From: Glycera tridactyla
Taxonomy: Eukaryota
Assembly: GCA_965644265.1 (NCBI GenBank)
Contig: OZ286462.1
Span: 93,682,001-93,746,000 of the forward strand
Length of the DNA stretch: 64,000 nucleotides
Direction of reading: 5' to 3'
The notes below the pieces were generated by a model that worked only from the letters and a program-made list of their open reading frames with translations, searched no databases and was not told the origin of the DNA. Shown here piece after piece: positions 13,401 through 64,000 of the stretch. Both the position numbers and the translations under genes were made by a program. How positions within the stretch are numbered: position 1 is the first letter of the stretch; every line of letters starts with the position of its first letter.

Positions 13401-13886
13401 CCAGGTAAACAAACAAGGAGATTGACAAATGTGTTCGGTTATGAACTTCAAACTTAAAATAAGTTCATGTTCGCAGTGCAAATTAGTTGTGACATCCACC
13501 GCTACTTCCACTTGCTAACCTTCATGTTTTTTTCCCGTCAACTTGTGTTCAGGTTGTTTGTTAGCAATGCTTGCAGGGAAAAATAAATCATCCAACAACC
13601 CTACCAACCAACCAACCAACCAACAAAGATACCCACCAATGTGATCACACTTGTGATGGACGTGGTACTCAGTACTGATGATTTCAAACAAACTTTTAGT
13701 CACGGGAGGCATATATTATGCCAGTGGCTACAACATGAGATTCTAGCCGAACCAACAAATTAACCAACCACCCGACCATCCAACTAACACATCATTGCAA
13801 TATCAGCATCGGGGGCACATGCACTTCAGAAGTCCCCAGTTTGACCTGCAGAGAAAACCAGTTGTTGCCATGATCATGATGCTACC

Positions 13887-46500: not shown

Positions 46501-49254
46501 TGATCAATTAATGTTTCGACACATAGATGACGGAGTCCACTGTATATTGCAAGTTCGCCGAACTCAAGTACTGGGGGTTAGCAGAGAAGTGCATTTTTAC
46601 ATAATATTCGGTGGAACCTGTCTACAAAGAGCGCCCTTGGTCGCTTTGAATTGTGGTTTTGGTAGACAGGTGGTCGTCGCCGACTGGTGGTCTTTGTAAA
46701 TTACACAATCAATCAACGGTACCTCGAGGGCCAGCAGGTGATATTTTGTTGTCAGGAGAATCAACGAAGGACATATTGAGTGTCTTTTCCCCTAACTTGC
46801 TTTTCCAGAGATGTTCTAGAGCTGACGTCACAGGTGATACCACTGCTTGGAGTCTATACCGTGTTCGACGGCATCGCAGTATGTAGTACTCCTCCTCCCC
46901 TCTTCTTCTTCTTCTTCTTCTTCTTCTTCCCCTTCTTCTTCTTCTTCTTCTTCTTCCCTCTTCTTCTTTCCTTCCCCTCTTTTGCTCCTTCTTAGTCTTC
47001 GTATTATCTTATTTCACCTTCTCTTCCCACCCTCTTCTCTCCTTATCATTCCTCTCCAGTATATACGTTTTCGCCTTCAGTTTTTGACTCTTCTCTAATC
47101 CCTAACCACAATCACCACCACAATCACCGCTACCATCACCACTATCATCACGACCACTGTCACTACAATAATAACCCCACTACCAGAAGCTCTATTACCG
47201 ACACGACGAAGACGACGACGACGACCACCACCACAGCCATCATCACTGCCATCACCATAAAAACCACCACAACCACCACGACCATGAAAACCACCACCAC
47301 TAACATCACCACCACCACCACTAACATCACCACCACCACCACTACCATCACAATAACAACCCCACTACCACAAGCAGCATCATCACCACCACCACCACTT
47401 CATTATCATCATTTTGAAAACCTCCAGAATACATTTGTTAGTGGATGTTGTTTTAGTGTGTATGTGGCGGTGCTCTGCGTGGCGGAGGGAAGATGTATAT
47501 CGGTGCCATTGTGATCTCTGTAGGCTATCTGATCGGTATGGGGGTTGGCCTGCCTCTCATGATGCTCACATCTCTCGGCATCACAGGTGGGTGTTCCGCA
47601 TCACTACTACCGCACTACTCTCGAATCACTACCGCAATATTTTTTCTTCACTACCACACCATTTTCCCATCGCTAGCGCAACATTTTTGCTTCAATGGCA
47701 CACCATTTTCCCATCGCTTGTGTAACATTTTCGCTTCACTGGCACACCATTCTTGCAATACTACCCCTACATTTTTGCTCCACTATCACACCATTCTTGC
47801 ATCACTACCACATTTTCACTTCACTAACACACTGTTCTTGCATCACTACTGCAACATTTTGCTTCACTTCCACACCATTCTTGCATCACAACCGCAACAT
47901 TTTTGCATCACTACCACACAATTCTTGCATCACAACCGCAACATTTTCGCTTCACTAACACACCATTCTTGCATCACGACCGCATCATTTTTGCTTGGCA
48001 ACCACACCATTCTTGCATCACTACCACAACATTTTTGCATCACTTCCACACCATTCTTTCATCACTACCACAATATTTTTGCTTCACTAACACACCATTT
48101 TGCATCACTTCCACAACATTTTTGCTACACTAACACACCATTTAGCATCACTTCCACACCATTCTTGCATCACTACTACAACATTTTTGCTTCACTACCG
48201 CAACATTCTTGCCTCACTATAACACCATTCTTGCATCACTACCACACCATTCTTCCATCACTACTGCATTCTTCTTCGTATGCTAGTGATGATCAATGGA
48301 TGACACCTTGCCTTTGCTGAAGATGACGTCAACAGATCGGCCCTTGGTAAGCACAATATAGATAGGTCAACAAACCATCTTGCGGTGTGCTGAATTTTAA
48401 GGGGATGGATCACCTCTTGGAATGCCGAAGGTTGGGCTGCAGTTAAGGCCGATAGGTCATCCCTCGGTATGTTGAAGGTGAGGTCCATCTTAATGATATA
48501 TGTGATATACTGGGTTGTGTTGCAGGCCTGTGGTCAAGCTTAGCCGTGACCATTATAATAGACAGCTGTGTATTGCTGGCGTTAATCCATCAATTCAACT
48601 GGAACAACCTTGTGGATGAGGTGATGTATATTCTCTCGTTATCACCTATCACTCTCAATTAACGGCCATCACCACCGCCATCACCACAATCACCATCACT
48701 ACCGCTACCACCAGCAACACTACCACCACTACCACAACCACCGCCACCACCATGGCTTACACACCACCACCACCGGCAACTACCACCATTATCACAACTG
48801 CCACCGCCACAATCACCACCACCACCATGGCATTACAACACCACCACCATCATGACCAGCAACTACCATCACCATCATCCCTTCATCCGAATTACCTTCA
48901 ATCACCTTCACCATCATCACAACCATTATCATTAGCCCAACTACGACCACATCACCACTACAATCACCATCACCACCAACAACCACCACCTTCACAACTA
49001 CCACCAATCGCTAACACCACCACTAGCAACACCACCGCTGCCATCACCGTCACCGCCTCCACACTACCACTACCACCACCGCCTTCCTATCCCATTTGGA
49101 AGAACACTACGATTGTCCCCTCCAATACAAGCATTCAACGACTTGTCGATTGTTTTCCAGGCCAGACAGCGTACCCACCCAGACACCATTTTTGAGGGAG
49201 ATGAGGACGAGGAGGCGCCTCTCCTTCCCAATAAAACACATAATCCCCGCAGAG
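21842..49254 (+). CDS. SLC47A: SLC47A/MATE-family multidrug and toxin extrusion transporter (18 exons reconstructed; 3' end unresolved)
   Basis: Phase-compatible GT-AG exons: 21842-21935, 29856-29971, 31292-31393, 31995-32063, 33000-33048, 33480-33579, 36304-36346, 36966-37010, 37750-37847, 38341-38438, 39654-39764, 40514-40581, 44119-44227, 45847-45922, 46809-46878, 47457-47586, 48526-48620, 49161-49254. MATE motifs LELDAVALA, NVTGISVALGLSSACDTLFSQ, VPSMLMICIEWWAFEVG, LAAQSII, GRYLGAG, GGALRG.GK..IGA, GLW. Confidence 0.92.
29856..29971 (+). CDS. SLC47A: MATE exon (..LFPGGFTFHLKALFVIGWPI)
   Basis: Acceptor tttcag, donor |gtgagt; matches the N-terminal L+AL..LA.P segment of MATE1. Confidence 0.8.
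30200..30880. repeat. Tandem duplication of a ~345-bp unit
   Basis: ACACAAGTGGTCTGCCCC...GAGATCAGTCAAAACAG occurs at about 30200-30545 and 30546-30880. Confidence 0.9.
31117..31183. repeat. (ATC)n microsatellite
   Basis: Direct reading. Confidence 0.95.
31292..31393 (+). CDS. SLC47A: MATE exon (TIIQITEYLFAGVALIFTGQIGTLELDAVALANS)
   Basis: 102 nt, phase 0/0, GT-AG. Confidence 0.92.
31508..31610. repeat. (GT)n microsatellite in MATE intron
   Basis: Direct reading. Confidence 0.95.
31995..32063 (+). CDS. SLC47A: MATE exon (VMNVTGISVALGLSSACDTLFSQ)
   Basis: 69 nt, hallmark MATE motif, GT-AG. Confidence 0.95.
33000..33048 (+). CDS. SLC47A: MATE exon (FFGSDNKKLTGTVLQK)
   Basis: 49 nt, ttgcag|...|gtaagt. 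Confidence 0.9.
33130..33210. repeat. (CA)n microsatellite in MATE intron
   Basis: Direct reading. Confidence 0.95.
33480..33579 (+). CDS. SLC47A: MATE exon (SLLIMFLACLPCLAIQLNTESLLVLVRQDKDVA)
   Basis: 100 nt, phase 1/2, GT-AG. Confidence 0.92.
33641..33818. mobile_element. MITE family A copy in MATE intron
   Basis: Same TIRs and TA flanks, 61 bp after the exon ending at 33579. Confidence 0.85.
34660..36260. repeat. 26-bp minisatellite, ~60 units, two variant domains
   Basis: Left units GCAGGGGATACTCACATGTCCTGTTT; right units GCAGGGAACACCCACGTGTCCTGTTT. Confidence 0.95.
36304..36346 (+). CDS. SLC47A: MATE exon (MAGHYMLICMPGVM)
   Basis: 43 nt, phase 2/0, GT-AG. Confidence 0.88.
36966..37010 (+). 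CDS. SLC47A: MATE exon (FFFIYCPIVKFLQSQ)
   Basis: 45 nt, KFLQSQ motif, donor gtaaga. Confidence 0.9.
37750..37847 (+). CDS. SLC47A: MATE exon (NIVYPSMIFGLVSIAINILLHYIFLWILHMGI)
   Basis: 98 nt, GT-AG. Confidence 0.92.
38341..38438 (+). CDS. SLC47A: MATE exon (GSALAQTISYTVMCLLNVAYILITGVHKPVWT)
   Basis: 98 nt, GT-AG. Confidence 0.92.
39031..39288. repeat. 128-bp tandem duplication
   Basis: TTACAATGAAGTAATCAC...ATATTGGGGA repeated at 39031 and 39159. Confidence 0.9.
39654..39764 (+). CDS. SLC47A: MATE exon (GWSTAIFYDWGPFMMAVPSMLMICIEWWAFEVGVLLA)
   Basis: 111 nt; conserved EWW.FE motif. Confidence 0.95.
40130..40310 (-). mobile_element. SINE family copy (diverged)
   Basis: GAAAATGCTGA..GGCACTGCTGCCGGG..AAAGACAGCAGTGGTTCTT shared with the other copies. 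Confidence 0.55.
40514..40581 (+). CDS. SLC47A: MATE exon (GALGTTSLAAQSIILQFDNIWYS)
   Basis: 68 nt, donor gtaagt. Confidence 0.93.
41121..43665. mobile_element. Non-autonomous DNA transposon, 18-bp perfect TIRs, 4-bp TSD TGAT (Sola2-like by inference)
   Basis: TGAT|GGGTCATTCCATGGTATT (41121-41138) ... AATACCATGGAATGACCC|TGAT (43648-43665). AT-rich interior with diverged ~370-bp direct repeats (about 42620-43400). No transposase ORF seen. Confidence 0.8.
43863..44080 (-). mobile_element. SINE family copy in MATE intron
   Basis: High similarity to 2535-2728 including the (AAAC)n tail. Confidence 0.65.
44119..44227 (+). CDS. SLC47A: MATE exon (FPLGISVACTIIVGRYLGAGEARNAVTAARVAITVA)
   Basis: 109 nt, VG..LGAG motif. 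Confidence 0.93.
45847..45922 (+). CDS. SLC47A: MATE exon (VIMGVIFGGLFILLKDSLPRLFNDD)
   Basis: 76 nt, donor gtgagt. Confidence 0.9.
46809..46878 (+). CDS. SLC47A: MATE exon (DVLELTSQVIPLLGVYTVFDGIA)
   Basis: 70 nt, GT-AG. Confidence 0.92.
47457..47586 (+). CDS. SLC47A: MATE exon (CVCGGALRGGGKMYIGAIVISVGYLIGMGVGLPLMMLTSLGIT)
   Basis: 130 nt, GG.LRG.G motif. Confidence 0.93.
47630..48270. repeat. ~22-bp minisatellite with alternating variants
   Basis: CATCACTACCACACCATTCTTG / CATCACTACCGCAACATTTTTG units. Confidence 0.88.
48526..48620 (+). CDS. SLC47A: MATE exon (GLWSSLAVTIIIDSCVLLALIHQFNWNNLVDE)
   Basis: 95 nt, GLW...NW motif. Confidence 0.92.
49161..49254 (+). CDS. SLC47A: MATE exon, cytosolic C-terminal loop (ARQRTHPDTIFEGDEDEEAPLLPNKTHNPRR)
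   Basis: 94 nt, ttccag|...G|gtaagg, phase 0/1; acidic dileucine-like EEAPLL motif. Confidence 0.75.
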
Positions 49255-49300
49255 GTAAGGACCCGTGGATGGAAGAGGCAAAGGCATAATTCATAATATA

Positions 49301-49494
49301 CAGTCGAACCTGCTCTAAAGACCACCTCTCTATAAAGACCACCTCTCTATAAAGACCACCTCTCTATAAAGACCACATGAGCTGCGACCGTGGTAGTATT
49401 TTCAACACTAAATGACCTCTCTATAAAGACCACCTGCCCATAAAGACCGCTTTTTGATGCGACCGAAGGCGGTCTCTATAGACAGGTTCAACTG
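49301..49494. mobile_element. MITE family A copy
   Basis: Same TIRs and TA flanks; extra AAAGACCACCTCTCTAT unit. Confidence 0.85.
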
Positions 49495-50086
49495 TACCTG
49501 CCTTATTCATGCTAGTTCAGGATCTATTGAATACTCAGAAGGGGTACACAGAGGTACGTATCTGGTTGGTTCCAACATTTAGTAGAAACTTGTATTGAGA
49601 ACGTGTATTCATACGCCTATGGGGAAGTTGCTCTTCTCTAAGTAAACAGGTTCATAAGGTTATCCTAAATGAGTCGGTGAGTGAAATCCCTGACACTCTA
49701 ACTTCAATCCCATCATCTCAAAAACGAGCAGTTGATCCTATACTGGTATTTTGAGAGAGAGAGAGAGGAGACGAAATATAGTGCCATAGCAAGGCAGCAT
49801 GGGCCTATCTCAACTTTCTCTTTGAAGACTGCTTCTGTGGGAAGCTCACCAATCAATTATTGAACAGATAGGAATTTATTCTAGGCCCAATGGCCCTCAT
49901 TCCTCCGCTGGGTGTCATCTCAATCATGAAACTAAAAAGCGAGTAAAATATGGGGAAGGTATTTGGTACATTGATCGGACGAGCCGGGGAACCCAGTGTC
50001 GTTACTTCCAAATGTAGGTTTATCGGGGATTTGATGGTATGTTCCATTCCATGAGTATTTACACGCCCTGTGTTCTATATCTGTGA

Positions 50087-50257: not shown

Positions 50258-50408
50258 AGCAAGACTAAATGGCCGTGAAGTAATAACGCATTACCAAACG
50301 AGGTCCGCATTTCGCCGAATGTCACGAGGCCGAAGGCCGAGTGACATTCGGCGAAATGCGGACCGAGTTTGGTAATGTGTTATTACTTCACAGCCATTTA
50401 GTCTTGCT
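50258..50408. repeat. 151-bp near-perfect palindrome (68-bp arms, 4 mismatches, 15-nt loop)
   Basis: AGCAAGACTAAATGGCCGTGAAGTAATAAC...GAATGTCAC | GAGGCCGAAGGCCGA | GTGACATTC...GTTATTACTTCACAGCCATTTAGTCTTGCT. Confidence 0.92.
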
Positions 50409-50667
50409 TTTATCACATGGATTCGGTGATGAAATGTGTTCTGGAAAGGATTTGTTAAAGAAAAACATGGAAGATCTCCGGACGTCTGGCGGCCAACAAC
50501 GACAATGCGTAGTAATACAAATTGCTGCGTCAGAAGGTCGGGAGCTGCCTCGAACAATAAAATCAAACTTACCAGGTGAAGAGTCACGTGAAAGAAGGAT
50601 ATTTGGTAGGAATATGTTATTTTGAGAGATTTCCGTTAGCCTTAAACATTCGTAGGACACGGGAAAT

Positions 50668-50720
50668 GGGCGTCCGAGCAGTCACTGCCGCAGTGTGGCG
50701 CCACCACCGCACCGGCACCT
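50668..50720 (+). repeat. Left imperfect terminal inverted repeat of ISL2EU element
   Basis: GGGCGTCCGAGCA...TGGCG...CACCGGCACCT aligns in three blocks with the reverse complement of 63679-63734, with a ~3-nt indel. Confidence 0.82.
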
Positions 50721-50824
50721 CTCCCGCGCAGGCTGAGATACTACAAACGTAAACAACTGCTAACAACTCATAGATACTCATCGAGCTATTTTAAGCCACT
50801 CAACAACATCACCCAGACACAGGC

Positions 50825-50922
50825 ATGGATAGGTACGATGGCTGGTGTGTGCCGGAGTTGAAAGGTGAATTGAAGAAGCGAGGGGCTAAGACTTCAGGTC
50901 GGAAGAAGGAATTGATTGAGAG
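50825..50922 (+). CDS. YqaJ gene exon 1 (SAP domain)
   Basis: ATG at 50825; W..PELK.EL..RG..TSG.K.ELI.R pattern; donor AG|gtgagt. Confidence 0.85.
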
Positions 50923-53900
50923 GTGAGTTTGTCAGGAGGTGGGCGATATTATGGTGCTTTACTGCTATGTGTGATAGGATCTCAACAGAGAGTAGAAGGG
51001 GCTGTTTCCCACCTCGAAATAGACCGATGCAGCCCATGAACAGATGAGCCAATTGCCGGATGCGCCTGTGCCCCAAGAGGGGCAGGTAATATTTTGAATG
51101 AATGGGAGGGGGGGGGGGACAAGAGCTTCTTGACAGGAGACAGCCTGCTTCCAGCCTGAGGGACCACTGTTTGAGAGCCTATAGTCGAATATACCTCTGA
51201 CTAAAGACCACTTGTTTCATGAGACTGGTTTTAGTGATATCTAGGATGGTATCTCTTCACAGATTTCACTGTGTCCCTGCATTGTTTTATACAGTGGAAC
51301 CTCCTGCAACTAGACCACAGGCACATCACCAAAATGTGGTCTCTCATCAGAGGTATTTTTGACAATGTCAAATAGGTAGTCTCTTATCAGAGGTACATTG
51401 GACTATATATCAAATAGGGATGCCACACTGTGAAAATGATCTCATGTCAGATGTGGTCTCTAGTTATCCCCCCCCCCCCCCCACTGAAGGTGGGAGGGGG
51501 GAGGGCATACTGGATTCAGTCTGATTTTGTTCACATGGGATAGAATGGAAGGTTCAAATCACTCATGACTGTTGCATGAATAGCTATTCGAAATATGATT
51601 CTATTTGGACTCCTACATTGTGTTTTACCAAACTGTTTGGCCTAGAAAACTATCAAAATTCTCACAAGCCCTTTTTGTTGAAGTAAGCATCCATCTCCTG
51701 TTTCCAATCTGGGTGTTTACCCCGCCCCCCTTGCAAGGTCAGTCTGCCAGATTGAAACCTCTGGTCAGCCTGATCAAGTTGCAGGTTGTATTGTACCAAC
51801 AGCAGAGATGCTAATTGATTGACAATGGGGGGGGGGGGGGGAACAAACATGCCACAGTAGATTTACAGGATGTTTGAGATGTGTTATCAATTGCCTTCTA
51901 TCCAGACATATCCTCCTCAAGAACACATTAAACCTCTTGAGGATAATCTCAGCTGCATATTAGCAAATACACAGCTTTTCTGATTTGTGTTTTGGGATTC
52001 ATATTTTACTGTTGATCATGCTGTCTCAGAAGTGGTACAGTAAAACTTATCTTACGAGACCGCCCCAAAGGCTAATGAAAAGTGGTCTCTCAAGACAGGT
52101 GATCTCTCATTGAGTGTATATTTGACTATGTCAAATAGAGAATAGCCGATAAAGAGCGGTCTATCATTAGAGGGTGGTCTCCCAAAAGAGGGGTATCCCA
52201 AGACAGGTTTCACTGTATTGTGTCTCATCTCATGTCAACAAAAGATGACCAATAAACCTCTTGCATTTGGAATATATCCTGTGTCTCAGTTCTTAATTTT
52301 TAACAGGGTCCCAATCGAATGTTTCATCCTGCTGTTCGTTTTTTCAGGCTTGAAGCTTATGACCGCAATGCTGATTTTGGGGCCGAATCCACTTCAGCTG
52401 AGAGTGTTTGGGTCATGAAGACTGTTGACCCAATTTTATACAAAGATGTGACAGCCAGCAGCGTGCTCCCTCCTCTGAGTGAATGCACCATCAGTGACTA
52501 CCTGAAGCCACTGCATACCAGGCTGGGACGAGTTTGCCGTGAACTTTATGATGAAAGGTGAGATATCGTGGTTTGCTGAGACTTGAGTTCTTGAGAATCA
52601 TCAAGCGTGGATTGGATTGCCATTTTGGAGAATGCAAGTAATCATTGAGAAGCTTGATTTTTTGGAGAATGCTTGAATTTTAACTGACATTGCCAAGGGA
52701 TCACACATTCATTGTATACGGTATTTAGTGATATATGTATGGATGATGACAGGACATATTTCCTGAACAGTCGGATCTATCGATACGCATATGTACATTG
52801 AAAACAAGAGACTGTACAGATTCAAATTTTGTTAAATCTCCTGTATGGTGGACATTCATGCAAGTCAATGTAGCTAATGAATTTTTGCACTGCTAGCGAG
52901 TGTGTAGTGGTGATAATCAGAAGTAATGATGGCTATGAGAAGGTTCAATTACCAGTGACTCGGCTGTGTGCTTCAGATCTCAAAATAGTCGGGAAAAATG
53001 TGTCCTATGCCCCTTTACAGCATGTTGATGTAAGTACATGTAATTGCAGTTTTTAAGGTTAAAACGACAGAGTGAAATGATTGTCTTAGTCATGAACAGA
53101 GTGCTTGATAAATGCTTATTCTCTGAATTTCTGTATGAGCACTAGATTTCAGAGATATCTACACGTGCAATCAAAAATTGTATTAGGCAGCCGTCCTCAA
53201 TACTAACATACAGTGAAATCTGCAATGAGAGACCCCTTGATGGGAGACCACCTCTTTGTGGAGACCGCTTTTTTTCAGGGCAGCATTTCTATGTGACATA
53301 GTCAAATATTCCTCCAAAGAGAGACCACCTCATTTGGGAGACCGCTTCTGTTGACATTAAGGGTGGTCTCTTACTGCAGGTTTCACTGTATGCCATCAAT
53401 ATGTTCCGTATCTTCATGTTGAGTATGTATAAGTGTGTCTGATTTTTCAGCTACTTCCACATGAAATAGGTGTTTCTAGTTATGGCACATATCCCTCGTC
53501 ACACTGGGATTATTCCATTCAAAAAAAGGGTGGATGAACAGATTCATACAATGCCCCCTAAATCAACAAAAAATTTGCACTATGCCATGTTGAGTGTACC
53601 CATTTTGGAACATTTTTTGAAGAAATGCCCCATTTTCTCAAATTTAAGGGGCCAATGCCCCCATTTCAGAAAATCCTGGATGCACACCCTTGAAAACTAC
53701 CCCCCCCCCCCCCCGCACTCATCTCTGAATTATTAGCTACTTCCTTACCCCACTTCCCTCCCCCAAAAATTGAATATGTTTAGACCCCCCCCCCCATCAT
53801 TAAAATTAAATAGAATGACCTACACCAAATCCTGCATTCACCTGTAATTCAGTAAGAGGTTGGTTAGTTTTTGGTGTGTCAGGTTACAGCATCCTATTCA

Positions 53901-56900
53901 CACCACAAACCCATGCTCTACCTCTATCAAATAGGTATTTTTTCAATAGTTTTGAGTCATATACTCAATCCAACAACTTTCAGTGCCTTGGTGTGTGAGG
54001 GGGGTGGCTTTCTACTCACCCCTGTTTATAATATGGGTGACTCACTGGTGAGTGGGAAATAATTGGTTGACATGGTAACTAAGATGAGGGGGGGGGGGGG
54101 GGGGTATTACTTGTTCATTCTATTATATCATAAACATGTATGTGATATCTGCTATTTCCAATGTCTCTTGAATCTCAGCCATGGGATTAAAATGCTGATG
54201 TGAATTTGTAATAATCACATACTGCTATCTGAGGTATTTTTATTGAAAAGTGATTGGCTGAATTACTCATTTTGCACATTGCGGCACGTAACTTCAGTCA
54301 GGCAATTTGGCTGTTTCTGGTTCAACTCATGTCAGCTCCATTTGTGCTGTATTATGACGCCCATGTAATAAGCATGGGTGGGATCATTCAAGAATCTTCC
54401 TTCTGCTTTCTCAACATAAGGTGAAAATTTGTGAAATTCAGAGACACTCAAGGTGTCATTTCTGTTATTAGAAAACAATGGGCGAACTGAATTGATCAAG
54501 AATGGTGATTCTTCTTCCTGCACCATGAGCAAATGTGAATCCTATACACTGAGTCAATTTGATTCTTCTATAGTTCACAGCGCTCACATCTTTCAATCAT
54601 TGATTAAAATATTGATCACTGATTGATTTATATAACTTAGTGCTAGATATTAGCCAGATAGCCAGGGGTTAGATCTATTCCCACCTGGCTACAATTTGTA
54701 TTTGATAAGGCGAAAATATGTATATGAGTGTATATTGGTGCACAAGTATCCAACTGTGTGAATGTTTTACCTCATAAATGCTTTGATCTCTGTGCAATGC
54801 CTATGTTACAACTTGTGATGTGGCAAAAATAAAGTATTTTGAATTTGAATTTGAATTGACTAGTCTTTAACCAATCTTGCTGAAAGGAATTACAGTCGAA
54901 CCTCCTCTAAAGACCATCTCTCTATAAAGACAACCTCTCTATAAAGACCACCCTTAGCTGCGACCTTGGTAGTATTTCCAACACTGAATGACCTCTCTAT
55001 AATTACCACCTCCCCATAAAGACCCCTTTTTAATGTGACCAAATGCAGTCTTCATAGAGAGGTTTGACTTTACTCTGAGGCAAATCGTGACATTGCTTAT
55101 TTCGTCACAGATAGCTCATGTAGTCACGAGAAGTTTTATGATTGTTGGCTGCAAGAAATGATTTCTCATACCAGAAACTCAATACACCCGTTTGAAATGG
55201 AGGTTTGGGAAAAGCTTGATGTATTTGGCTAAAGATGGAATGGCCGCTTTATCCTGATTTGCAATAGAAAGTATCGTCCCAGTGCCGACACAGTGCTGTG
55301 TAATCTACAGGCAATGAATATTGCCACAGATCAAAAAGATCATGACCATGGCAGTAGTATTTCGAACTTTGTGTAGATGAAAGACTACCGTACTCATCAG
55401 ATTGACCATGTGAATAGATATTTCACACATGTGGTGGACTTGGATAGAATGATGCTGTCAACATTCAAAAAAATACAAGGAGAACATATTTTCCAACCAA
55501 GTTTTTATTCATCGATGATATTAGTGCCCATCTGCACCAAAGATATTGTGGCAGCATATGTTGGAATATATTCTGTAGGCATCAACAGTCATTTCGTAAC
55601 AATTTCAACACATCAAATACCAACTCATCCACAGGTACAGGATTTCATTTACACCTATGTCCTGTCATTCTGCGTCATGAACTACACCCATCAATCACAG
55701 CTGGGACAGAAGCACCTTTGTCCAATTGGATTATATTATCATTCACTGGGATGCAAACCATACATACAGACCTCTCTTGGGAGACCACCCCAAATGCCAA
55801 CCGAAGTGGTCTCTCAAAAGAGGTGACCTCTCATTGGAGGCATGCGACTATGCCAAATAGAAATGAACCAATGAAGAGCAGTTGCTCGCTCAAAAGAGGT
55901 TTCACTGCAGTATCATTCCATCGGGTGGATGGAATTATATACCCATGACCAAATAATGGCAGTATCATACCCAGAATGGGCAGTGTAGCATCAACACAGT
56001 GGTCAGCAGCCACCACAAAATATCAGAGTTCAAGGTCATAGATACAAGTGTAAAGGTCACAGGGTCAAAATGTCATGCCTATGAGCACCCACTCCTCATT
56101 GGTAGTCAACATACCCAAAATGGGCAGTGTGTCATCAACCAAAACATACTTAGCAGCTGATGTTTGGATGCTGGACTCCCACCTAGACCCACAAGAGAAA
56201 TGTTCTGCAAAGTTGGCATGCACGGACAGACAGATGGATGGTATAGTTGAGGTTTAGCAGCATGTATCAACCCAGAGGATTCTCTTGTGGGCATCACTCT
56301 CACAAACCCTGAACACAAGATGATGGAGAACCATATAGGATGTCAAGTGGAAGTAGCTGATAGCTCAGACTGTCAGAAGTGATAGTCATTCTGTACAACG
56401 GTCAAATGCCATTTTGCCAACACTGCATCTCTAATTGCAGGTTTGTGCGATTCATGCGTTGCGCCCCAAATGATGGAATCACTTACTTCAAGTCCCAATG
56501 CCGGGCAAAAATGAGACGGACCACAGCGTATGACATTGACATTGCTGTTGATAGCCAGGGTCACATTGTTGAGGCCCAATGTGAATGTGCTGCAGGAATG
56601 GGACCACATGCCCATTGTAAACATATCCGTGCTACATTCTGTGCCCTACTTGACCGTAGTCTAGGAAAGTCAATGAACATAGAGCTGGCTTGTACTGAAA
56701 GGATACAGTCATTTCATCGACCGCACCGACTCCATGATGGTTCACCAGTCAAATCAGATTCACTTGTCCTGAACAATGCAAGTGCGGATAACCTTATCTT
56801 TGATCCAACACCAGTATTTGCCCAAGATTTATCATGTGCCTCAACCATTCTTATGAATGCCACTATAAATTTTGCCGCAAGAACCAATAAGAAACCAGCT

Positions 56901-57689
56901 CTTTTACAGATGTGTCCACCTGCAAATATTTTTGCTTCACTTCACGATCACGATTACTTGGCCATTTCTCCTGATTCTCAGTTTCTTCAAGAGCAATGCC
57001 TGACACAAATAACAGAGGCTGAAGGGAACAAAATTGAAGAAGGAACAAGAGGTCAAAGCAAAGTAGTGCTTTGGCATATGGAGCGTGCAAAGCGCATGAC
57101 TTCTTCAAATTTTGGGAAAATATGCAAGTGCTCAGAGTCTCGAAAGGGAAAACTTGCACACGACCTTCTCAATGCCACTGAGATCACTGCAGCCCCACTC
57201 AAACATGGCAAGAAATATGAACCAGTTGCGATTTCATCGTACTGTCAAATCACAAATTCAATTGTTCATGCTAGTGGTCTTGTTGTTAGTATTGATAGGC
57301 CGTATTTGTCATGTTCCCCAGATGGTGTCATCAATGATGACCTATTTCTTGAAGTGAAATGTCCCTACAGCTCAAGAGAGAAGCCAATCAACCCTCAAAC
57401 AGTACCATACTTGGAAGAAATTGTGGTAAATGAGAACAAATCATTAGCCCTCCAGAAGAGTCATGATTATTACTATCAGGTACAGGGGGTGATGCACATC
57501 ACCAAGAAGAAACTCTGTCACTTGGTTGTATACACATTTAAGGAGGTAGCTATCATTGAAGTACCATATGATCAGGACTTTATCAAAAAAATGCTCGAGG
57601 ATCTTGACAATTTCTTTCATGATCATTTCCGTATGAAATTTCTTCAACAACATTTGTACCGAAATACACATTCATATAACTGGGATTAG
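50825..57689 (+). CDS. SAP domain + SWIM zinc finger + YqaJ (lambda exonuclease-like) protein, 518 aa; join(50825..50922,52348..52557,56441..57689)
   Basis: Three GT-AG exons, phase 2/2, 98+210+1249=1557 nt with no internal stop. Exon 1 MDRYDGWCVPELKGELKKRGAKTSGRKKELIERL is a SAP consensus. Exon 3 has SWIM CECAAGMGPHAHCKH and YqaJ motifs RMTSSNFG, HGKKYE, SCSPDG..LEVKCP, YYYQVQG. Confidence 0.9.
52038..52215. mobile_element. TA-flanked MITE family B (CAGTGAAACC-type ends) nested in YqaJ intron 1
   Basis: TA|CAGTAAAAC...GGTTTCACTG|TA with GGTGGTCTC motifs. Confidence 0.72.
52348..52557 (+). CDS. YqaJ gene exon 2
   Basis: Acceptor ttttcag|G, donor AG|gtgaga; reads (R)LEAYDRNADFG...CRELYDE(R) and completes the SAP helix. 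Confidence 0.85.
53211..53388. mobile_element. MITE family B copy nested in YqaJ intron 2
   Basis: TA|CAGTGAAATC...GGTTTCACTG|TA with GAGACCACC motifs. Confidence 0.75.
54893..55070. mobile_element. MITE family A copy nested in ISL2EU (YqaJ intron 2)
   Basis: TA|CAGTCGAACC...GGTTTGACTT|TA, diverged. Confidence 0.75.
56441..57689 (+). CDS. YqaJ gene exon 3 (SWIM + YqaJ exonuclease)
   Basis: Acceptor ttgcag|G; long open frame (track ORF 56379..57689) with SWIM and PD-(D/E)xK nuclease motifs. Confidence 0.93.
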
Positions 57690-59612
57690 AGCGCTTCAGC
57701 TGGGTTGGGACATTCCAGTCATGTGGAAAATTCAGCCAATTTACTCTGGCAGGACCAGAAAACTATGAGCCGAAAGATTTGTAATTCACCATTCGTACCG
57801 AAAAAAATGAAATCATCTGAATTCAGCCAAATCATTAAATCAATAGGCACTGTGTAATTTACCATTTTTTATAGCATGAATTCTTTCATTAAAAGTGGAA
57901 ATGCCCAACTCTTAGTTACAGCAGAAATTCTTGAGGGTGGATTTTTGCAATCTACTCTTCCCATGGGAGAGTGGCTGAATTTCTTTTTCGTGAAGACTCA
58001 ACCTGCACACCTGAAAAATCAACCTACCCTGCCTATATGAGCAAGTCATTTATGATCATTTTCCACCTGCCCACCAGGTAAATCAACCTGCCCTGCAAAT
58101 ACAATTCACTAGAGACAGCCAGTCAGTGTTATTTGGAACTGATAGTCTCTGTTACATGCGTTTATCTTCGGTCCATTATCCGTATCTCTGCCACTGAGAG
58201 GATGATAGATAACTAAGTCAGGTTCTTGATCAGATGAATGATGGACTGGGCCCAGTCGAGTGGGAGTAGTTTTGTTTATTTAAGCAAATTGCATGTAGTA
58301 GTAAGCCAGGAGAATCTGTCCCCCAAGCCCACCTACAACCGATCAGACTCCCCTGCATCATTTCCAGTCTACAGTGAAACCTATCTACAAAGGCCTGCTT
58401 TGCGCATCAGAAAGTGACCCTAATAAGCAGGTGGTCTATATCAAGGGGTCATTTATTGATAGTCCTGCTGGGAAGTTTCTGAATCATATTTCCCAGATCA
58501 ACGCTCTCTCTCTCTAGTGTAATTACTGGCTGTCCATACTTTTTCAAGCAGACACATATATACAGGAATAGCATTAGTACATGAACATGAGCATGAGCAT
58601 GCAGATGTGAGATAGATTGCTGAGGGCAGCAGGGTGTCTGTCACTGAACGACAGTCAAAATTGTAGACCAGAAGATTGCTGTTGAAAACTTGGATTTTTG
58701 TAAATAATAATGATATGTATGACTGCCATGAAAAATCCCCTGATGCAATATCAGGAAACATTAGTTATGCTTGATAGATGTTTAAATTTAAGGTGTAAGT
58801 TGCCACCGTGAGTTGAACATTTGATTTTTAACACTGTTGGGGCAGATGTTGAAGTTGCCATGATATTGAAAGATGTCAGTGGAAAACAGAAAGGTTTGAG
58901 CATTGGAATCTTCTTTGTACATGTATATAATATAGTGGATGTTGTCACAGATAGCATAATCATGACTGAACCCAAGCATGTGGTGGGATAGAAGTGTAAC
59001 AATCCAGGAGTGAGTACTGATTAATTGATTGAATGACTGATCAGAGCCTAATTTAATGATATATATATATAGGTATCAGTGTGTCTGAGCTGACTGCTTT
59101 GCCCCTTGAAACCTCTGGATTTTTTTTCTATCCTGGGTCGGTGCAAAATATGTTTGCAGGGGGTAGATGACATGACATATTTAGTTCTTCAGCCTAAAGT
59201 TGTACCTGCTTCAGAGACCACATGCACACAAAAAAAACACCTGCCAACAAGGACACCCTCAGTTCTAACCATGAGAGTATTTTCTATGGTGAGTGACTTC
59301 ATACAAAGGTCACATATGTGACTAAGGGTGGTCACTCAAACCAGGTTTGACTGTACATTTCCCGGTTTTGGGGTACGGGCTAGGCGGTCAGCAAACCAAA
59401 CATGGTGGTCCCTGGCCGGATTTGGGAGGTGGTCGCTATGCAGAGGTCAAATATAGTGAAATATGAGTCGCTCCCGGTTACGGCTGGTCGTTAACAAGAG
59501 GTGGTTGGAGAAGGGGGGGGGGGGGGGGGGGGAAGATCAATCTTGATCATCATTTGATGAACAAATACAATAAATTTTACCTTGAACAAACAGAGATTTG
59601 TTATTTTTTAAT

Positions 59613-60775
59613 TCAGCTGTCAGCAGGGACAATGCATGCACGTAAATTGCACAACATGAAGCATGCAAATACAATCCTGCTGCCAAGTATGGTTTCCTGT
59701 TCATTCATTGGTGACGCCAAGATTTTATACGTCTTTGCAAGACCAATGACACGCTCAACATGTACACGCTTGCTTGCAATTTTTCTGTCTCTGATTACCT
59801 CTTTGTTGGACAACTGGTTCTTCTTTTTCAAGAAAGTCGGTATATTGATCTTGACATCGAATGGTGCAAAAATATCCTGAACATTGAACCCCTTGTCACA
59901 CATTATAGAGTCACCAGGGTCACATTTTTCAGGCAGCTGACTTCTTTCCACCAAAAGACGATCACTGGCAGAGCCACCATACGCTGGGGGTATGTGTGAG
60001 GTCAGTCCACCGGGAGTGATACCCACCACAGACTTGAGAGTGTTACGATTTTTGTAGGTTGAGTAAGTAACTTGCTGAGCAGTCGGCTTGCTGGGTCGCT
60101 TCACTGGAACTTCAACTCCATCAATGATGACCCTAGTGGATGGGAACTGACGTCCAAAATCTGTGGGCATGTAGAATTTAACCATATCCTTCGAGGGCCA
60201 GATGTTGACCTTACTCCACTGACAATACATAAAGTTGATCCAGGTCACAAAAATGTTTGATACAGAGAATTCCGAGATGTTGAAGAAGTAGGCTAACTCT
60301 TGATTTGGCGTATGTAGACGGAGTTTGATGAGGGTAATTAGTAGTTGGTTCTCTACAGATACCTTCACAGGAGTTCTCCATCTGTAGTTCAGACTATATG
60401 CTGCTGGGCCTAGGGTTTGCAGCACATAGTCAAAATGGTCCGCATCATCAAGTCCTGTGAAATAGTGTAGAGATTTCTCGTCAAGTTTGAGATCTTCAAT
60501 CGATATACGTGACCATCGAGGTGTCTGACTTGAACTGTCAACTGGAGGAGGTGTAGGTTCAGGTTCAGGTTCATCACGTAACATTTCATCTTCATTGCTG
60601 ATCACCATCTCCTGAACATCAACATCAAAATCATGATCAGGTTCTTTGGATTTGATCCTTGAGCGAACTTCTGCTCGTTCTCTACGCTGGCATGATGATG
60701 GTGACAATTCCATCACCCATGCAAAGCTTGACGGCACAGCATCTCTTTTGAGAATTTTCCTCTCACGGGCTCCAC
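59613..60775 (-). CDS. Transposase exon 2 (THAP end, HTH, DDE core)
   Basis: Acceptor tttcag|GT at 60775; open frame to TGA at 59613-59615. Confidence 0.93.
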
Positions 60776-62008
60776 CTGAAATTGAAAACCAAAGAGCAAA
60801 TTATTAGTGTATGTATTCAGCTGGCTTGAGTAATTATGAGAGATGTGAAAATCTAGGGCTCTACATTGCTACATGTGGGTAGCCAATTGCTACCAAATTT
60901 ACCCTCTGCCTCCCATAACTTGAAAGTTAGAAGCCAGGCGCCCCTAAATTTTGAGAGGAAGTAATTGGCAATGTATTGACTGGCTACCAAAATTTTGCAC
61001 TGGCTACCACAAAATTCCAACTTAGGAGCCAGCTGACACCAAAATAGTTTGGCCAATGTAAAGGCCTGTATATTTTCACATGGATGTGGCATTTTCAGTG
61101 GAGTAGCAGGTCTGACCTTACACTCACTTAACACACACACATACACACCATGCATGCATACATACAAACACCCCTCCCCGACTCACCTGGGTAAAGAATA
61201 TTCAACCAGCCCTTCTGCCAGAAGGGGGGGGGGGGGGGGGGCTACACCCTAAGGAGGTGCGGGACAGCTAATGTATTATCAGATATAGCAATCTCTCCCA
61301 TTCTAACTGAACCAATTTCCAATCCAATTATTTGTGACTTTCATTACTTAATCTGCTCTTCCCTAATTTTTTCATGACACTACATCCCATCATATATTGC
61401 CACAACCCCCCCCCCCCCCCCCCCATCCCACCGGCATTTCCATTATAGTTGTTTACTGCATATTTCTTGAAAAATTGAATACCTAAAAATGAGATGTCAT
61501 TCAGGTCTATTCGAGAAAAATATGGTGAAACCTGTGACAAGGGAGTACCCTGAATATCAAATGATGACCATGATTGTATTTTCCACAAGGAACCTCTAAA
61601 CTGAGACCTCCTGTCAACTTTTTAGCTTGACCAGATCATAATTTACATCACTGACAGAGAGACACAGGAAGACTGACAGATAAACAGACAGACAACGAAA
61701 GAGACAGACAGACAAGCCCATGTGCATCCTGTGGGTTNNNNNNNNNNNNNNNNNNNNNNNNNNNNNNNNNNNNNNNNNNNNNNNNNNNNNNNNNNNNNNN
61801 NNNNNNNNNNNNNNNNNNNNNNNNNNNNNNNNNNNNNNNNNNNNNNNNNNNNNNNNNNNNNNNNNNNNNNNNNNNNNNNNNNNNNNNNNNNNNNNNNNNN
61901 NNNNNNNNNNNNNNNNNNNNNNNNNNNNNNNNNNNNNNNNNNNNNNNNNNNNNNNNNNNNNNNNNNNNNNNNNNNNNNNNNNNNNNNNGACACACAGACA
62001 GACCCACC

Positions 62009-62052
<44 letters not shown>

Positions 62053-63261
62053 GATAGGGACGGACTGAAAGACTATTAGGCACACAGGCAGATACACATT
62101 AACACAGATGAGAAGGTTCAGATACACAGACAGACAGAGGGGAGGGGGGAGGTCAGTCTTCAGTCTGTTTACCCAATGGGCTAAGACATGGCAATTATAT
62201 AGTTAATGATTATACTGATCGCATGGGAAGGAGAACAATGATAATAACAATAGTAGTAATAATAATAATGATACTAATCGAAATAAAAAAACAATGAAAA
62301 TGAGCTATGTGAATTGAGGTACAATTTGGGATATGCAGGAGGACAGGTACAAAAGTTGAGAAGGGCTGGATCAAGTTCTACATCAACTACCTGAAGGGAA
62401 GCTGAAGAAAACAGTTAATGTAATGCCTGGCAAGAAGTCTGGATTCACACATCTGAGTTCTGTAATGTAACCATTTTTATGACCTTTGCTGTCCCAGTTT
62501 TCTAATGAACACCAGATGGGTCGATATCATTGGTGATATTGTGGTCAGTGATGCTGCCCCCTGCTGGACATCCTGTTGATGTGTTAATGGCTTGTGTAAG
62601 CAGAGGGTGATTCGGGGAAGGGGCTCAGACTAAGAGCATGGACTGGTTATGAGTTATACAGTCAAACCTCTCTATAAAGGCCATCCTGAGCTGCAACCAT
62701 GGTAGTATTTTCAATGGTGAAAAACCTCTGTTGAGACCACCTTCCCACAAAGTCCACTTTTTCGCAACTGGAGGTGGTCTTTATGGAGAGGTTTGACTGT
62801 ATTTAGGATGGTCTCTGGTCGCAGATTTATTTGCGTTCCTGCACTGTTTTATACAGTGGAATCTGCAACGACACCACAGGTACATCACAAAAATGTGGTC
62901 TCAAAAGAGGGGGTCTCTTATCAAAGGTATATGTGACTATAGAGTGAAACCTGTATTAAGCAACCACTATATTCAGCAATCACCTGTCGTAAGCTACCAC
63001 TTTTCAATATGCCGTCAGAGTATTTTTCTCCTGTATTAACAAACCACCTGTCTTAACCAACCACTTATTCATTCCCTGGCGGTGGTTGCTGAATACAGGT
63101 TATTCTGTACATCAAATAGGGATCCCACACTGTGAGATTTGTCTCTTGTCAGATGTAGTCTCTATCTTTCACTGAACTGTTGAACTTGCCCAAGTATGAT
63201 TCATACAGAGTGCCCATGGATGTTCAGTGTAACCTATCAACAAAGACCACTCTTGGTTGTG

Positions 63262-63338
<77 letters not shown>

Positions 63339-63575
63339 CATGTGCATGGGTTATTGAATAAACTCACCATGTAAAGTTTCTTCACCAGGCAAGTAGTCAT
63401 CTGGTTTGAAGTGCTGATAGCAAACAATCATGTATGGCTTGGGCTCCCACCGGGCACCCTGCTTGTTGGAGGCACGACGAATGGCATGTACCCACTCCTG
63501 CTTCACAATCTGGCTGGCAGGAAACTGGTGTCCGCCTCTGTTGCTGCATCCTGGCACACAACACCTGGTAGGCAT
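59613..63575 (-). CDS. THAP-HTH-DDE (Harbinger/ISL2-family, DDE_Tnp_4-like) transposase, 456 aa; complement(join(59613..60775,63368..63575))
   Basis: Two exons (208+1163=1371 nt, phase 1). THAP C2CH: CCVPGC..W..C..HF in exon 1, LKRDAVPS in exon 2. HTH region LLITLIKLRLHTPNQELAYFFNIS. Catalytic triad IIDGVE / IMCDKGF / RVHVERVIG intact. Confidence 0.92.
61738..61988. other. Assembly gap inside the transposase intron (other gaps: 5479-5634, 9338-9555, 15795-16276, 18302-18645, 20158-20787, 37967-38122)
   Basis: Runs of N. Confidence 0.98.
62659..62799. mobile_element. MITE family A-related copy nested in transposase intron
   Basis: TA|CAGTCAAACC...GGTTTGACTG|TA. Confidence 0.75.
62942..63107. 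mobile_element. TA-flanked MITE nested inside another repeat in the transposase intron
   Basis: TA|GAGTGAAACCTGTATT...AATACAGGTTATTCTG|TA; the empty site is visible in the paralogous module near 51410. Confidence 0.7.
63263..63335. repeat. (CA)n microsatellite near the transposase intron donor
   Basis: Direct reading. Confidence 0.95.
63368..63575 (-). CDS. Transposase exon 1 (THAP zinc finger)
   Basis: MPTRCCVPGCSNRGGHQFP...WVHAIRR...VCYQHFKPDDY; donor G|gtgagt at 63367. Confidence 0.9.
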
Positions 63576-63678
63576 TATGTCTAGCTCCAGTGATCAAAGA
63601 TGATAACAAATACAGACAGGAGACAGCTGGTAGTCGCTAGGGTAAACAATAACAGTGCCTCGTTGTGGGAGTAACGCT

Positions 63679-63734
63679 AGGTGCCGGTGTGATGGGCACG
63701 CCATCTATCGGAACACGCGGATGCACGGAAGCCC
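63679..63734 (-). repeat. Right imperfect terminal inverted repeat of ISL2EU element
   Basis: Reverse complement reads GGGCTTCCGTGCA...TGGCG...CACCGGCACCT; followed by the AT duplication. Confidence 0.82.
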
Positions 63735-64000
63735 ATTGTATCAAAATAGCTGCAAAGCATGGGGCTACATTCTTGGGCAAAGCACTACGTTGGTTGCGTA
63801 GGAAGCGGATTGATCTGCATACTTTTGACCTGGTGAAGCAGTCGGGTCAAGGGAGCTTGACCCTGCGAATCAACTAATGGAACATGTGAAGCTTTGCTGC
63901 AACAAACATGGATTTATTCAAATATATCTGCCGTGACATCAGGTTAGTCATCAACGAGAACAATGCGCAAACATTCGACAATACATTCATGTCGTATCTA

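What the first reader, a model, noticed from the sequence alone, without database searches (positions are those of the whole stretch)
50825..57689. Hidden SAP-SWIM-YqaJ nuclease architecture assembled across three exons
Seen: a 98-nt exon encoding a textbook SAP DNA-binding motif splices in frame via a 210-nt exon to a SWIM finger (CxC..CxH) and a YqaJ/lambda-exonuclease domain with intact PD-(D/E)xK residues (SPDG...EVK) and a YYxQ motif. Established: lambda exonuclease/YqaJ enzymes are 5'-3' dsDNA exonucleases that make 3' overhangs for recombination; SAP domains tether proteins to DNA ends or AT-rich DNA. Inference: the element carries its own DNA-tethered end-resection nuclease, which could process excision breaks or bias donor-site repair toward homologous gap repair and so raise copy number.
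Basis: partly seen in the sequence, partly recalled or inferred. Interest (0 to 1): 0.7.

Follow-up and report, generated by a model that had tools for sequence, protein, structure and literature searches.

The report
ISL2EU transposon's accessory SAP-SWIM-YqaJ nuclease gene
The three-exon gene is real and encodes a DNA-binding, lambda-exonuclease-like nuclease, but it is the already described second gene of ISL2EU cut-and-paste transposons; its role in transposition has never been tested.

Summary
Observation confirmed. Exons 50825-50922, 52348-52557 and 56441-57689 (+) join in frame through GT-AG introns into a 518-codon gene. It encodes SAP (Pfam E 5.5e-10), a SWIM-type CxC..CxH domain and a YqaJ/lambda-exonuclease domain (Pfam E 1e-16; Foldseek LHK-Exo E 1.5e-10). 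The D..ExK triad and the residues aligned to lambda exonuclease's 5'-phosphate pocket are invariant in 60 homologues.

Full-length homologues from a brachiopod and bivalves hit the three exons collinearly. Four copies in this genome keep start, splice sites and stop, with dN/dS 0.11-0.15. No RNA run was listed, so the junctions lack transcript proof.

The gene lies in a 13,067-bp element (50668-63734) with GGG-initial inverted termini, AT target-site duplications in an AAT..ATT site, and a convergent THAP-HTH-DDE transposase gene. [quoted passage not shown]

So this is a new member of a known kind. Only the explicit SAP and SWIM assignment goes beyond those papers. End resection and donor-repair bias remain plausible but untested.

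The scan's first stage had already read this same stretch as an ISL2EU element (s1-329806).

The parts
50666..50667 (.). Left AT target-site duplication (flank reads A-AT)
   Evidence: same AAT|GGG junction in copies C28, C32, C26
50668..50680 (+). Left terminal inverted repeat, begins GGG
   Evidence: 11 of 13 matches to the right end. Homology to the three other copies starts at 50665.
50825..50922 (+). ORF2 exon 1: start codon and SAP domain
   Evidence: Pfam SAP E 5.5e-10. tblastn with residues 1-33 of homologues. 0 non-synonymous changes among 4 copies.
50923..52347 (+). ORF2 intron 1 (GTGAGT..TTTCAG, 1425 nt)
   Evidence: an intron lies at the same residue in the Mercenaria homologue
52348..52557 (+). 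ORF2 exon 2: end of the SAP helix and a linker, no Pfam family
   Evidence: tblastn with residues about 32-103 of homologues; pN 0.02-0.07 against pS 0.14-0.24 among copies
52558..56440 (+). ORF2 intron 2 (GTGAGA..TTGCAG, 3883 nt), enlarged by nested repeats
56441..57689 (+). ORF2 exon 3: SWIM domain, conserved linker, YqaJ nuclease domain, stop
56442..56672 (+). SWIM-type domain (four strands, CxCx9CxH at 56580-56624, helix)
   Evidence: C47, C49, C59, K60, H61 invariant in 59 sequences. Model pLDDT 92. ZSWIM8 SWIM region Z 6.4. Atlas SWIM clusters TM 0.76-0.79.
57072..57509 (+). YqaJ / lambda-exonuclease-like PD-(D/E)xK domain
   Evidence: Pfam residues 211-356 of the exon 3 translation. PDB profile hits 3syy 2.3e-19 and 1avq 1.4e-15. 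Foldseek TM by target 0.78.
57321..57359 (+). Catalytic D (SPDG) .. E-V-K
   Evidence: aligned to the SPDG and ELK motifs of lambda exonuclease
59613..60775 (-). Transposase exon 2: AVPSSF tail of THAP, HTH_Tnp_4, DDE_Tnp_4, stop
   Evidence: Pfam DDE_Tnp_4 E 2.5e-36 and HTH_Tnp_4 E 1.2e-13; acceptor TTTCAG
63368..63575 (-). Transposase exon 1: THAP zinc finger
   Evidence: Pfam THAP E 5.5e-11; donor G|GTGAGT
63722..63734 (-). Right terminal inverted repeat
   Evidence: homology to copies C28 and C32 ends at 63737
63735..63736 (.). Right AT target-site duplication (flank reads AT-T)

Best explanation
The three exons are the accessory gene (ORF2) of a full-length ISL2EU-type (PIF/Harbinger-like, PHIS superfamily) cut-and-paste DNA transposon at 50668-63734. 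The partner gene, on the other strand and tail to tail, encodes a THAP-HTH-DDE transposase. ORF2 encodes a 518-residue protein with an N-terminal SAP DNA-binding motif, a linker, a SWIM-type zinc-finger domain, a conserved but poorly modelled segment, and a C-terminal lambda-exonuclease/YqaJ PD-(D/E)xK nuclease. Shown: the gene structure, the domains, the intact catalytic residues, strong purifying selection, and linkage to the transposase in this genome and in other phyla. Inferred at about 0.6: the protein is an active Mg-dependent 5'-to-3' exonuclease that engages 5'-phosphorylated double-strand ends, as lambda exonuclease does. Inferred at about 0.35: it acts at the breaks made by the transposase and resects them to 3' tails, so that the donor gap is repaired by homologous recombination from a copy that still holds the element. 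SAP and SWIM would supply DNA or transposase contacts.
For: Domains. Invariant C47/C49/C59/H61, D294/E304/K306 and W211/R215/S222/Q346 in 60 homologues. R215, S222, S292 and Q346 align to lambda exonuclease R28, S35, S117 and Q157 (the role of those residues is from my memory of the 2011 lambda exonuclease-DNA structure). Element hallmarks (GG-initial TIRs, AT duplication in A|AT|T, THAP-HTH-DDE transposase, YqaJ ORF2) match the published ISL2EU definition. Four copies share homology only between the termini. All four keep both genes open. ORF2 has dN/dS 0.11-0.15 over 516 codons with no indel. Matching by eye, some 50 YqaJ hits in the genome have a Harbinger-type DDE hit within a few kb, nearly all convergent, down to about 25% identity. 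The same convergent pair occurs in Lingula and Mercenaria.
Against: There is no transcript evidence, since no RNA run was listed. There is no biochemical evidence for any ISL2EU ORF2, and the papers state that the function is unknown. The homotrimer prediction gave no answer. Pfam SWIM is below threshold. Copy number is low: four full copies with dS 0.23-0.38, which is unusual for a recently active family. Unrestrained lambda-exonuclease-like resection would also degrade the excised element's own 5' strands, so the donor-repair model needs some form of targeting that is not shown.
Confidence: 0.85

Rival explanations
1. ORF2 is the second-strand nuclease of a two-protein transposase. The DDE protein nicks the 3' ends, and the PD-(D/E)xK protein cuts or trims the 5' strands at the element ends, as TnsA does beside TnsB in Tn7. 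On this reading it is not a repair-biasing resection enzyme.
For: The nuclease is linked to the transposase in every family seen. It evolves more slowly than the DDE core: 90-91% against 72-73% amino-acid identity between the window copy and the other three. TnsA is also a PD-(D/E)xK enzyme (my knowledge).
Against: The sequence and fold are specifically lambda-exonuclease/LHK-Exo-like. The residues aligned to the lambda 5'-phosphate pocket are invariant, which points to an end-dependent exonuclease rather than a site-specific endonuclease. Related PIF/Harbinger elements transpose without such a nuclease; their ORF2 is Myb-like.
Confidence: 0.2
2. ORF2 works mainly as a DNA-binding or recruiting adaptor, like the Myb-like ORF2 of Harbinger. 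It would bring the transposase to the element ends or into the nucleus, and the nuclease domain would be secondary or inactive.
For: Published descriptions call it a DNA-binding protein. SAP and SWIM modules are present. Both genes of Harbinger are needed for transposition.
Against: The catalytic D..ExK and the residues aligned to the phosphate pocket are invariant across 60 homologues. The nuclease exon is under strong purifying selection. The ISL2EU transposase has its own THAP and HTH DNA-binding domains.
Confidence: 0.1
3. The gene is a host gene domesticated from a transposon and no longer part of a mobile element.
For: There are only four close copies, on four chromosomes, all intact, with dS 0.23-0.38 and dN/dS 0.11-0.15. 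The introns are large and full of nested repeats.
Against: Each copy is bounded by the same GGG-initial termini with AT duplications in AAT..ATT. Homology stops at the termini. An intact transposase gene sits beside each copy. Ten short loci share only the terminal 40-75 nt at 81-97% identity, as non-autonomous derivatives would.
Confidence: 0.05

Closest known systems
[quoted passage not shown]
   Same: AT duplication in an A|AT|T target, TIRs starting GG, a THAP-HTH-DDE transposase, a second gene with a YqaJ domain, and an animal host.
   Different: The element is 13.1 kb against a published mean of about 4.8 kb for autonomous consensus sequences. The excess comes from large introns filled with nested repeats. 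The three papers I searched for these terms do not mention SAP or SWIM (only PMC4482050 was searched for both, PMC9179366 for SWIM), and the library holds no paper with both 'YqaJ' and 'SAP domain'. The DDE core of this copy is far more diverged from its sister copies than the rest of the element.
Lambda exonuclease (1avq, 3sm4) and LHK-Exo (3syy), phage YqaJ-type recombination exonucleases
   Same: The fold matches (Foldseek E 1.5e-10 to 3.5e-9, TM by target 0.65-0.78). The profile matches (E 2e-19 and 1e-15). The SPDG..ExK catalytic motif and the residues aligned to the Arg/Ser/Gln 5'-phosphate pocket are shared.
   Different: About 300 extra N-terminal residues (SAP, linker, SWIM, conserved disordered segment). 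There is no partner annealing protein such as Red-beta or RecT in the element. The oligomeric state is unknown (one search gave no answer). It is a eukaryotic, intron-bearing gene.
[quoted passage not shown]
   Same: A eukaryotic DDE cut-and-paste transposon that carries a lambda-exonuclease-like accessory nuclease.
   Different: A different transposase superfamily (Kolobok against Harbinger-like). There the nuclease follows the transposase domain, whereas here it is a separate convergent gene. I did not compare the sequences.
FAN1 (SAP domain plus a PD-(D/E)xK VRR-nuc nuclease with 5' flap and 5'-3' exonuclease activity); from my own knowledge
   Same: A SAP DNA-binding motif combined with a PD-(D/E)xK nuclease that acts from 5' ends. 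One homologue gives a faint FANC_SAP hit (E 0.046).
   Different: The nuclease subfamily differs (VRR-nuc, not YqaJ), FAN1 has no SWIM, and it is a host repair gene. This is an analogy of design, not homology shown here.
SWIM domains of ZSWIM8, MuDR-type transposases and bacterial SNF2-associated proteins
   Same: A four-stranded sheet followed by CxCxnCxH and a helix. The best solved match is the ZSWIM8 SWIM region (Z 6.4, rmsd 2.2 A over 67 residues). Atlas clusters that are 66-100% PF04434 match at TM 0.76-0.79.
   Different: Pfam PF04434 does not reach significance on this protein. The Z score is in the range the tool calls middling.

Membership tests
ISL2EU transposon | 2-bp AT target-site duplication within an A|AT|T target (PMC4482050) | tested here: met
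   The window element has AAT|GGG.. on the left and ..CCC|ATT on the right. Copies C28 and C32 show the same at both ends, and C26 at its left end.
ISL2EU transposon | Terminal inverted repeats that begin with GG | tested here: met
   Both ends begin GGGC, with 11 of 13 terminal bases matching in the window copy. In copies C28 and C32 the first 9 terminal bases match between the two ends.
ISL2EU transposon | Transposase with DDE, HTH and THAP domains | tested here: met
   DDE_Tnp_4 E 2.5e-36, HTH_Tnp_4 E 1.2e-13, THAP E 5.5e-11. The two exons join in frame to 456 codons.
ISL2EU transposon | Second ORF with a YqaJ exonuclease domain | tested here: met
   PF09588, 62 bits against a cut-off of 22.
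ISL2EU transposon | Mobility: several copies at unrelated sites | tested here: met
   Four full copies on four contigs share homology only between the termini. Ten further loci match only the terminal 40-75 nt. Present-day activity was not tested.
YqaJ / lambda exonuclease family (PF09588) | Profile match above the curated threshold | tested here: met
   all 60 aligned homologues match
YqaJ / lambda exonuclease family (PF09588) | PD-(D/E)xK catalytic residues D .. E-x-K | tested here: met
   D294, E304 and K306 are invariant. They read SPDG..EVK at 57315-57359 and align to lambda exonuclease.
YqaJ / lambda exonuclease family (PF09588) | Lambda-exonuclease fold | tested here: met
   AF2 model pLDDT 87.7. 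Foldseek 3syy E 1.5e-10 with TM by target 0.78; 3sm4 and 1avq TM by target 0.65-0.70.
YqaJ / lambda exonuclease family (PF09588) | 5'-phosphate binding pocket (lambda R28 and partners) | tested here: met
   Invariant R215, S222 and Q346 and near-invariant S292 align to R28, S35, Q157 and S117. The role of these residues is from memory, not from a tool.
YqaJ / lambda exonuclease family (PF09588) | Toroidal homo-oligomer (trimer) | tested here: inconclusive
   The three-copy prediction of residues 125-415 gave no answer.
YqaJ / lambda exonuclease family (PF09588) | 5'-3' exonuclease activity on duplex ends | not testable with these tools
   Needs purified protein.
SWIM zinc finger (PF04434) | CxCxnCxH signature | tested here: met
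   C47, C49, C59 and H61 are invariant in 59 sequences.
SWIM zinc finger (PF04434) | Pfam profile match above threshold | tested here: not met
   No hit at E up to 1 on the window protein. Only 6 of 60 homologues hit, best E 0.0024. Some homologues carry a source name 'SWIM-type domain-containing protein'.
SWIM zinc finger (PF04434) | SWIM fold (sheet plus zinc knuckle plus helix) | tested here: met
   Model pLDDT 92. The top solved match is the ZSWIM8 SWIM region, Z 6.4. Atlas clusters of PF04434 proteins match at TM 0.76-0.79. This is moderate strength only.
SAP domain (PF02037) | Profile match above the curated threshold | tested here: met
   39.1 bits against 23.9 on exon 1 alone. Eight full-length homologues also carry it at the N terminus.
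SAP domain (PF02037) | DNA binding | not testable with these tools
   Needs a binding assay.

The most novel reading that the evidence does not exclude
The ORF2 nuclease is an obligatory part of the ISL2EU transposition machine. Either it resects the donor break so that homologous repair restores the element, making a cut-and-paste element effectively replicative. Or it serves as the 5'-strand nuclease of a two-protein transposase. The SAP-SWIM module and the invariant but disordered C-T-x3-Q-x-F-H / FDPRP segment would dock it on the transposase or the element ends. That would be the first eukaryotic DDE transposon shown to bring its own end-processing exonuclease.
Probability: 0.3. Interest if true: 0.6.

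Novelty: new member of a known kind. Interest (0 to 1): 0.25.

Why it matters
The finding itself is ordinary: a correct annotation of a published transposon type. Its value is as a clean and probably functional example. Both genes are intact, the nuclease is under strong purifying selection, and the active site is complete. This could serve to test what no one has tested, namely why one branch of the Harbinger-like transposons replaced the Myb-like helper with a lambda-exonuclease-like nuclease. The explicit SAP-SWIM-nuclease layout also gives concrete handles for such experiments: catalytic mutants, a SAP deletion and SWIM cysteine mutants.

Tried and rejected
1. RNA evidence for the two junctions: the look-up of sequencing runs on exon 3 listed no RNA run, so read laying could not be used.

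2. Toroidal trimer: complex prediction with three copies of residues 125-415 gave 'no answer'. It is not evidence either way.

3. The Pfam SWIM model gave no significant hit. A profile of the SWIM domain found nothing among PDB sequences at E up to 10. The SWIM reading therefore rests on the motif and on fold searches.

4. Every search and fold used exons by reference. dN/dS was computed exon by exon and only the counts were summed.

5. The exhaustive protein search (search of protein representatives) was not used, because the word search and family scans settled the family.

6. The domesticated-host-gene reading was considered and set aside, because homology ends at the TIRs with AT duplications and each copy has an intact transposase.

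7. An endogenous viral alkaline exonuclease was considered because of the Viral_alk_exo Pfam hit (E 1.7e-07). It was rejected because the stronger match is YqaJ and the gene lies in a TIR-bounded two-gene transposon.

8. One search printed two spurious 'summed' rows that held exon 2 only. This was corrected.
Full report
**The observation**

An ATG lies at 50825 and a 98-nt exon ends in a consensus donor (GAGAG|GTGAGT) at 50922. A 210-nt exon runs from TTTCAG|G at 52348 to a GTGAGA donor after 52557. A last exon starts at TTGCAG|G at 56441 and runs into the 436-codon open frame that stops at 57689. The phases fit, and the total is 1557 nt, i.e. 518 codons plus stop.

Exon 1 on its own matches Pfam SAP (E 5.5e-10, 39.1 bits against a cut-off of 23.9). 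The exon 3 frame matches YqaJ (E 1e-16) and, more weakly, the viral alkaline exonuclease family. The motifs read AQCECAAGMGPHAHCKH and CSPDG..LEVKCP at the stated places.

**Is the splicing real?**

No RNA run was listed for this sequence, so there is no transcript proof. Three indirect lines agree.

- Full-length homologues of 506-554 residues from Lingula anatina, Mercenaria, Saccostrea, Pecten and unnamed assemblies hit the window in three collinear pieces. Residues 1 to about 33 hit 50825-50923, about 32-103 hit 52346-52558, and about 100 to the end hit 56439-57683. These are the predicted exon borders.
- The genome (2.04 Gb, 207 contigs) holds three more copies at 90-91% amino-acid identity. 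All keep the ATG, both GT..AG pairs and the stop, without a single indel in 516 codons.
- Summed exon by exon, dN/dS is 0.11-0.15 at dS 0.23-0.38. The SAP exon has 7-8 synonymous and no non-synonymous differences against the window copy.

The Mercenaria gene model has an intron at the same residue, after SAP residue 32. Everything was done exon by exon by reference.

**The protein**

A word search with exon 3 found 164 relatives, best 50% identical. The named ones are all 'uncharacterized' or 'SWIM-type domain-containing' proteins of brachiopods, molluscs and an insect, and several carry SAP plus YqaJ.

In an alignment of 60 of them the invariant columns include three groups:

- C47, C49, C59, K60, H61, which form the SWIM signature.
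- D294, E304, K306, which form the PD-ExK triad.
- W211, R215, S222, Y343, Q346.

A profile of this alignment finds LHK-Exo (3syy, E 2.3e-19), lambda exonuclease (1avq, E 1.4e-15) and mimivirus R354 among solved structures. In the printed alignment R215, S222, S292 and Q346 stand opposite lambda R28, S35, S117 and Q157. From memory of the 2011 lambda exonuclease-DNA complex, those residues hold the 5' phosphate.

The AlphaFold model of exon 3 has mean pLDDT 87.7. Its C-terminal half superposes on LHK-Exo and lambda exonuclease (Foldseek E 1.5e-10 to 3.5e-9, TM by target 0.65-0.78).

The first 82 residues of exon 3, folded alone (pLDDT 92), form four strands, the Cys/His knuckle and a helix.

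- The best solved match is the SWIM region of ZSWIM8 (Z 6.4, rmsd 2.2 A over 67 residues).
- The ESM Atlas returns clusters made of PF04434 SWIM proteins (TM 0.76-0.79).
- It also returns clusters with SAP, SWIM and YqaJ together from Cnidaria, Arthropoda and Chordata.
- Pfam's SWIM model itself does not reach significance here, so SWIM membership is by motif and fold, not by profile.

Residues 84-114 of exon 3 are modelled with pLDDT under 50, yet they hold invariant residues (C84, T85, Q89, F91, P102). I cannot explain that segment.

**The surroundings**

The gene lies in a 13,067-bp element.

- The left end at 50668 and the right end at 63734 are inverted repeats beginning GGGC (11 of 13 bases match).
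- Each is flanked by AT, and the flanks read AAT and ATT.
- Copies on contigs C28 and C32 have the same junctions at both ends, and C26 at its left end.
- Homology among the four copies starts at 50665 and ends at 63737.

On the minus strand, tail to tail with the nuclease gene, is a two-exon gene of 456 codons.

- Exon 1 (63575-63368) is a THAP finger (E 5.5e-11).
- Exon 2 (60775-59613) begins with the AVPSSF tail of THAP and holds HTH_Tnp_4 (E 1.2e-13) and DDE_Tnp_4 (E 2.5e-36).
- A 251-N gap (61738-61988) lies in its intron and was left alone.

**What is known**

Three papers describe exactly this combination as the ISL2EU group of the PHIS (PIF/Harbinger-ISL2EU-Spy) superfamily (PMC4482050, PMC4122938, PMC9179366). 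Its features are:

- AT duplications in an A|AT|T target.
- TIRs usually starting GG.
- A DDE-HTH-THAP transposase.

PMC9587614 notes a lambda-exonuclease-like nuclease in KolobokE transposons as well. SAP does not occur in PMC4482050, and SWIM occurs in neither PMC4482050 nor PMC9179366. The library holds no paper with both 'YqaJ' and 'SAP domain'. The scan's own first stage had also read this same stretch as an ISL2EU two-gene transposon (s1-329806). I verified its termini, duplications and both genes.

**Linkage beyond this copy**

I compared the genome-wide hits of the nuclease and the transposase by eye. The 16 best nuclease loci each have a Harbinger-type DDE hit 1-3 kb away on the opposite strand, pointing towards it. 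This covers three families at 100/90%, 40% and 36% identity. In all, roughly 50 loci show the pairing, down to about 25% identity, with a few in other orientations. In Lingula the SAP-YqaJ gene is followed 400 bp later by a convergent HTH_Tnp_4/DDE_Tnp_4 gene. In Mercenaria it is followed by a convergent THAP gene. The nuclease is thus a stable component of this transposon group, as published.

**How it most likely works**

Shown: an intact, selected protein with a lambda-exonuclease fold and a complete active site, preceded by SAP and SWIM modules, always partnered with the transposase.

Inferred: it is an end-dependent 5'-3' exonuclease (my estimate about 0.6). It acts on the double-strand breaks of transposition and makes 3' tails that steer donor-gap repair towards homologous recombination, which would restore the element at the donor site (about 0.35). 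It is reasonable, but nothing tests it.

The main rivals are these:

- A TnsA-like role in cutting or trimming the 5' strands at the element ends (about 0.2).
- A mainly adaptor role like the Harbinger Myb-like protein (about 0.1).
- Domestication as a host gene (about 0.05). This is contradicted by the termini, the duplications, the intact neighbouring transposases and ten loci that share only the terminal 40-75 nt.

The expected ring trimer could not be assessed, because the one complex job returned no answer.

**Verdict**

The kind is already described, so this is a new member of a known kind, with a modest addition: the explicit SAP and SWIM modules and the conserved residues aligned to lambda exonuclease's 5'-phosphate pocket. 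Interest 0.25.

Noticed in passing
window 57750-63276, against copies G000:C28, C26, C32 (L013-L018): The window element looks chimeric. Its left part (terminus, ORF2) and right end (THAP exon, terminus) are 86-90% identical in DNA to the three sister copies. Its DDE exon is only 74% identical in DNA and 72-73% in protein, with synonymous sites saturated (pS 0.81). The three sisters differ from each other by dS 0.13-0.18 there. No closer transposase exists in the genome (next best 52%). This suggests exchange of the catalytic module between ISL2EU lineages, while THAP, termini and ORF2 stay together.
   Followed up: partly
G000: C51:74551960, C28:85605523, C39:64711524, C18:28128653, C34:47763735, C47:58789524, C18:86500693, C7:59138329, C54:767827, C31:72065508: Ten loci match only the first 40-75 nt of the element's left end at 89-97% identity. 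They are probably non-autonomous (MITE-like) relatives that use the same termini. An eleventh, at C1:47670564, is weaker at 81%.
   Followed up: no
window 56691-56783 (residues 84-114 of the exon 3 translation): This segment has invariant residues (C84, T85, Q89, F91, P102, with H92, S101 and K104 near-invariant), and a conserved FDPRP-like motif follows at residues 120-124. AlphaFold nevertheless gives pLDDT under 50 for residues 84-114. It may be a docking motif that folds only on a partner.
   Followed up: no
window 54891-55072, also 4156-4322, 12020-12205, 19013-19194, 33636-33820, 49296-49497, 62656-62802: A SINE-like repeat of about 180 nt, with internal 17-nt repeats, is scattered through the window and sits inside both genes' introns. 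The insertion at 54891-55070 is precisely absent from the C26 copy of the element but present in C28.
   Followed up: partly
window 50258-50408: A near-perfect palindrome (74-nt arms, 92% complementary, 3 nt apart) lies just outside the element's left end. Copies of it lie inside the introns of the three sister elements, so it is a small foldback or MITE-type repeat.
   Followed up: no
G000:C34:27791980-27817294: A 25-kb cluster of many broken fragments of this same ORF2 (55-81% identity, several stops each), all on one strand. It looks like a decayed tandem or rearranged array of element pieces.
   Followed up: no
window 34636-36245; 6254-6958; 47562-48300; 13864-14061: Tandem arrays: a 26-nt unit in about 50 or more copies; a 37-nt minisatellite; a 22-nt array; and a 22-nt array built on CCTAACCCTAA telomere-like units. 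They account for most of the long 'ORFs' in those places.
   Followed up: no
L020 (Mercenaria mercenaria CM038773.1:39736926-39756823): The Mercenaria homologue and its THAP neighbour lie inside an intron of a short-chain dehydrogenase gene. That is a nested transposon annotated as ordinary protein-coding genes.
   Followed up: no
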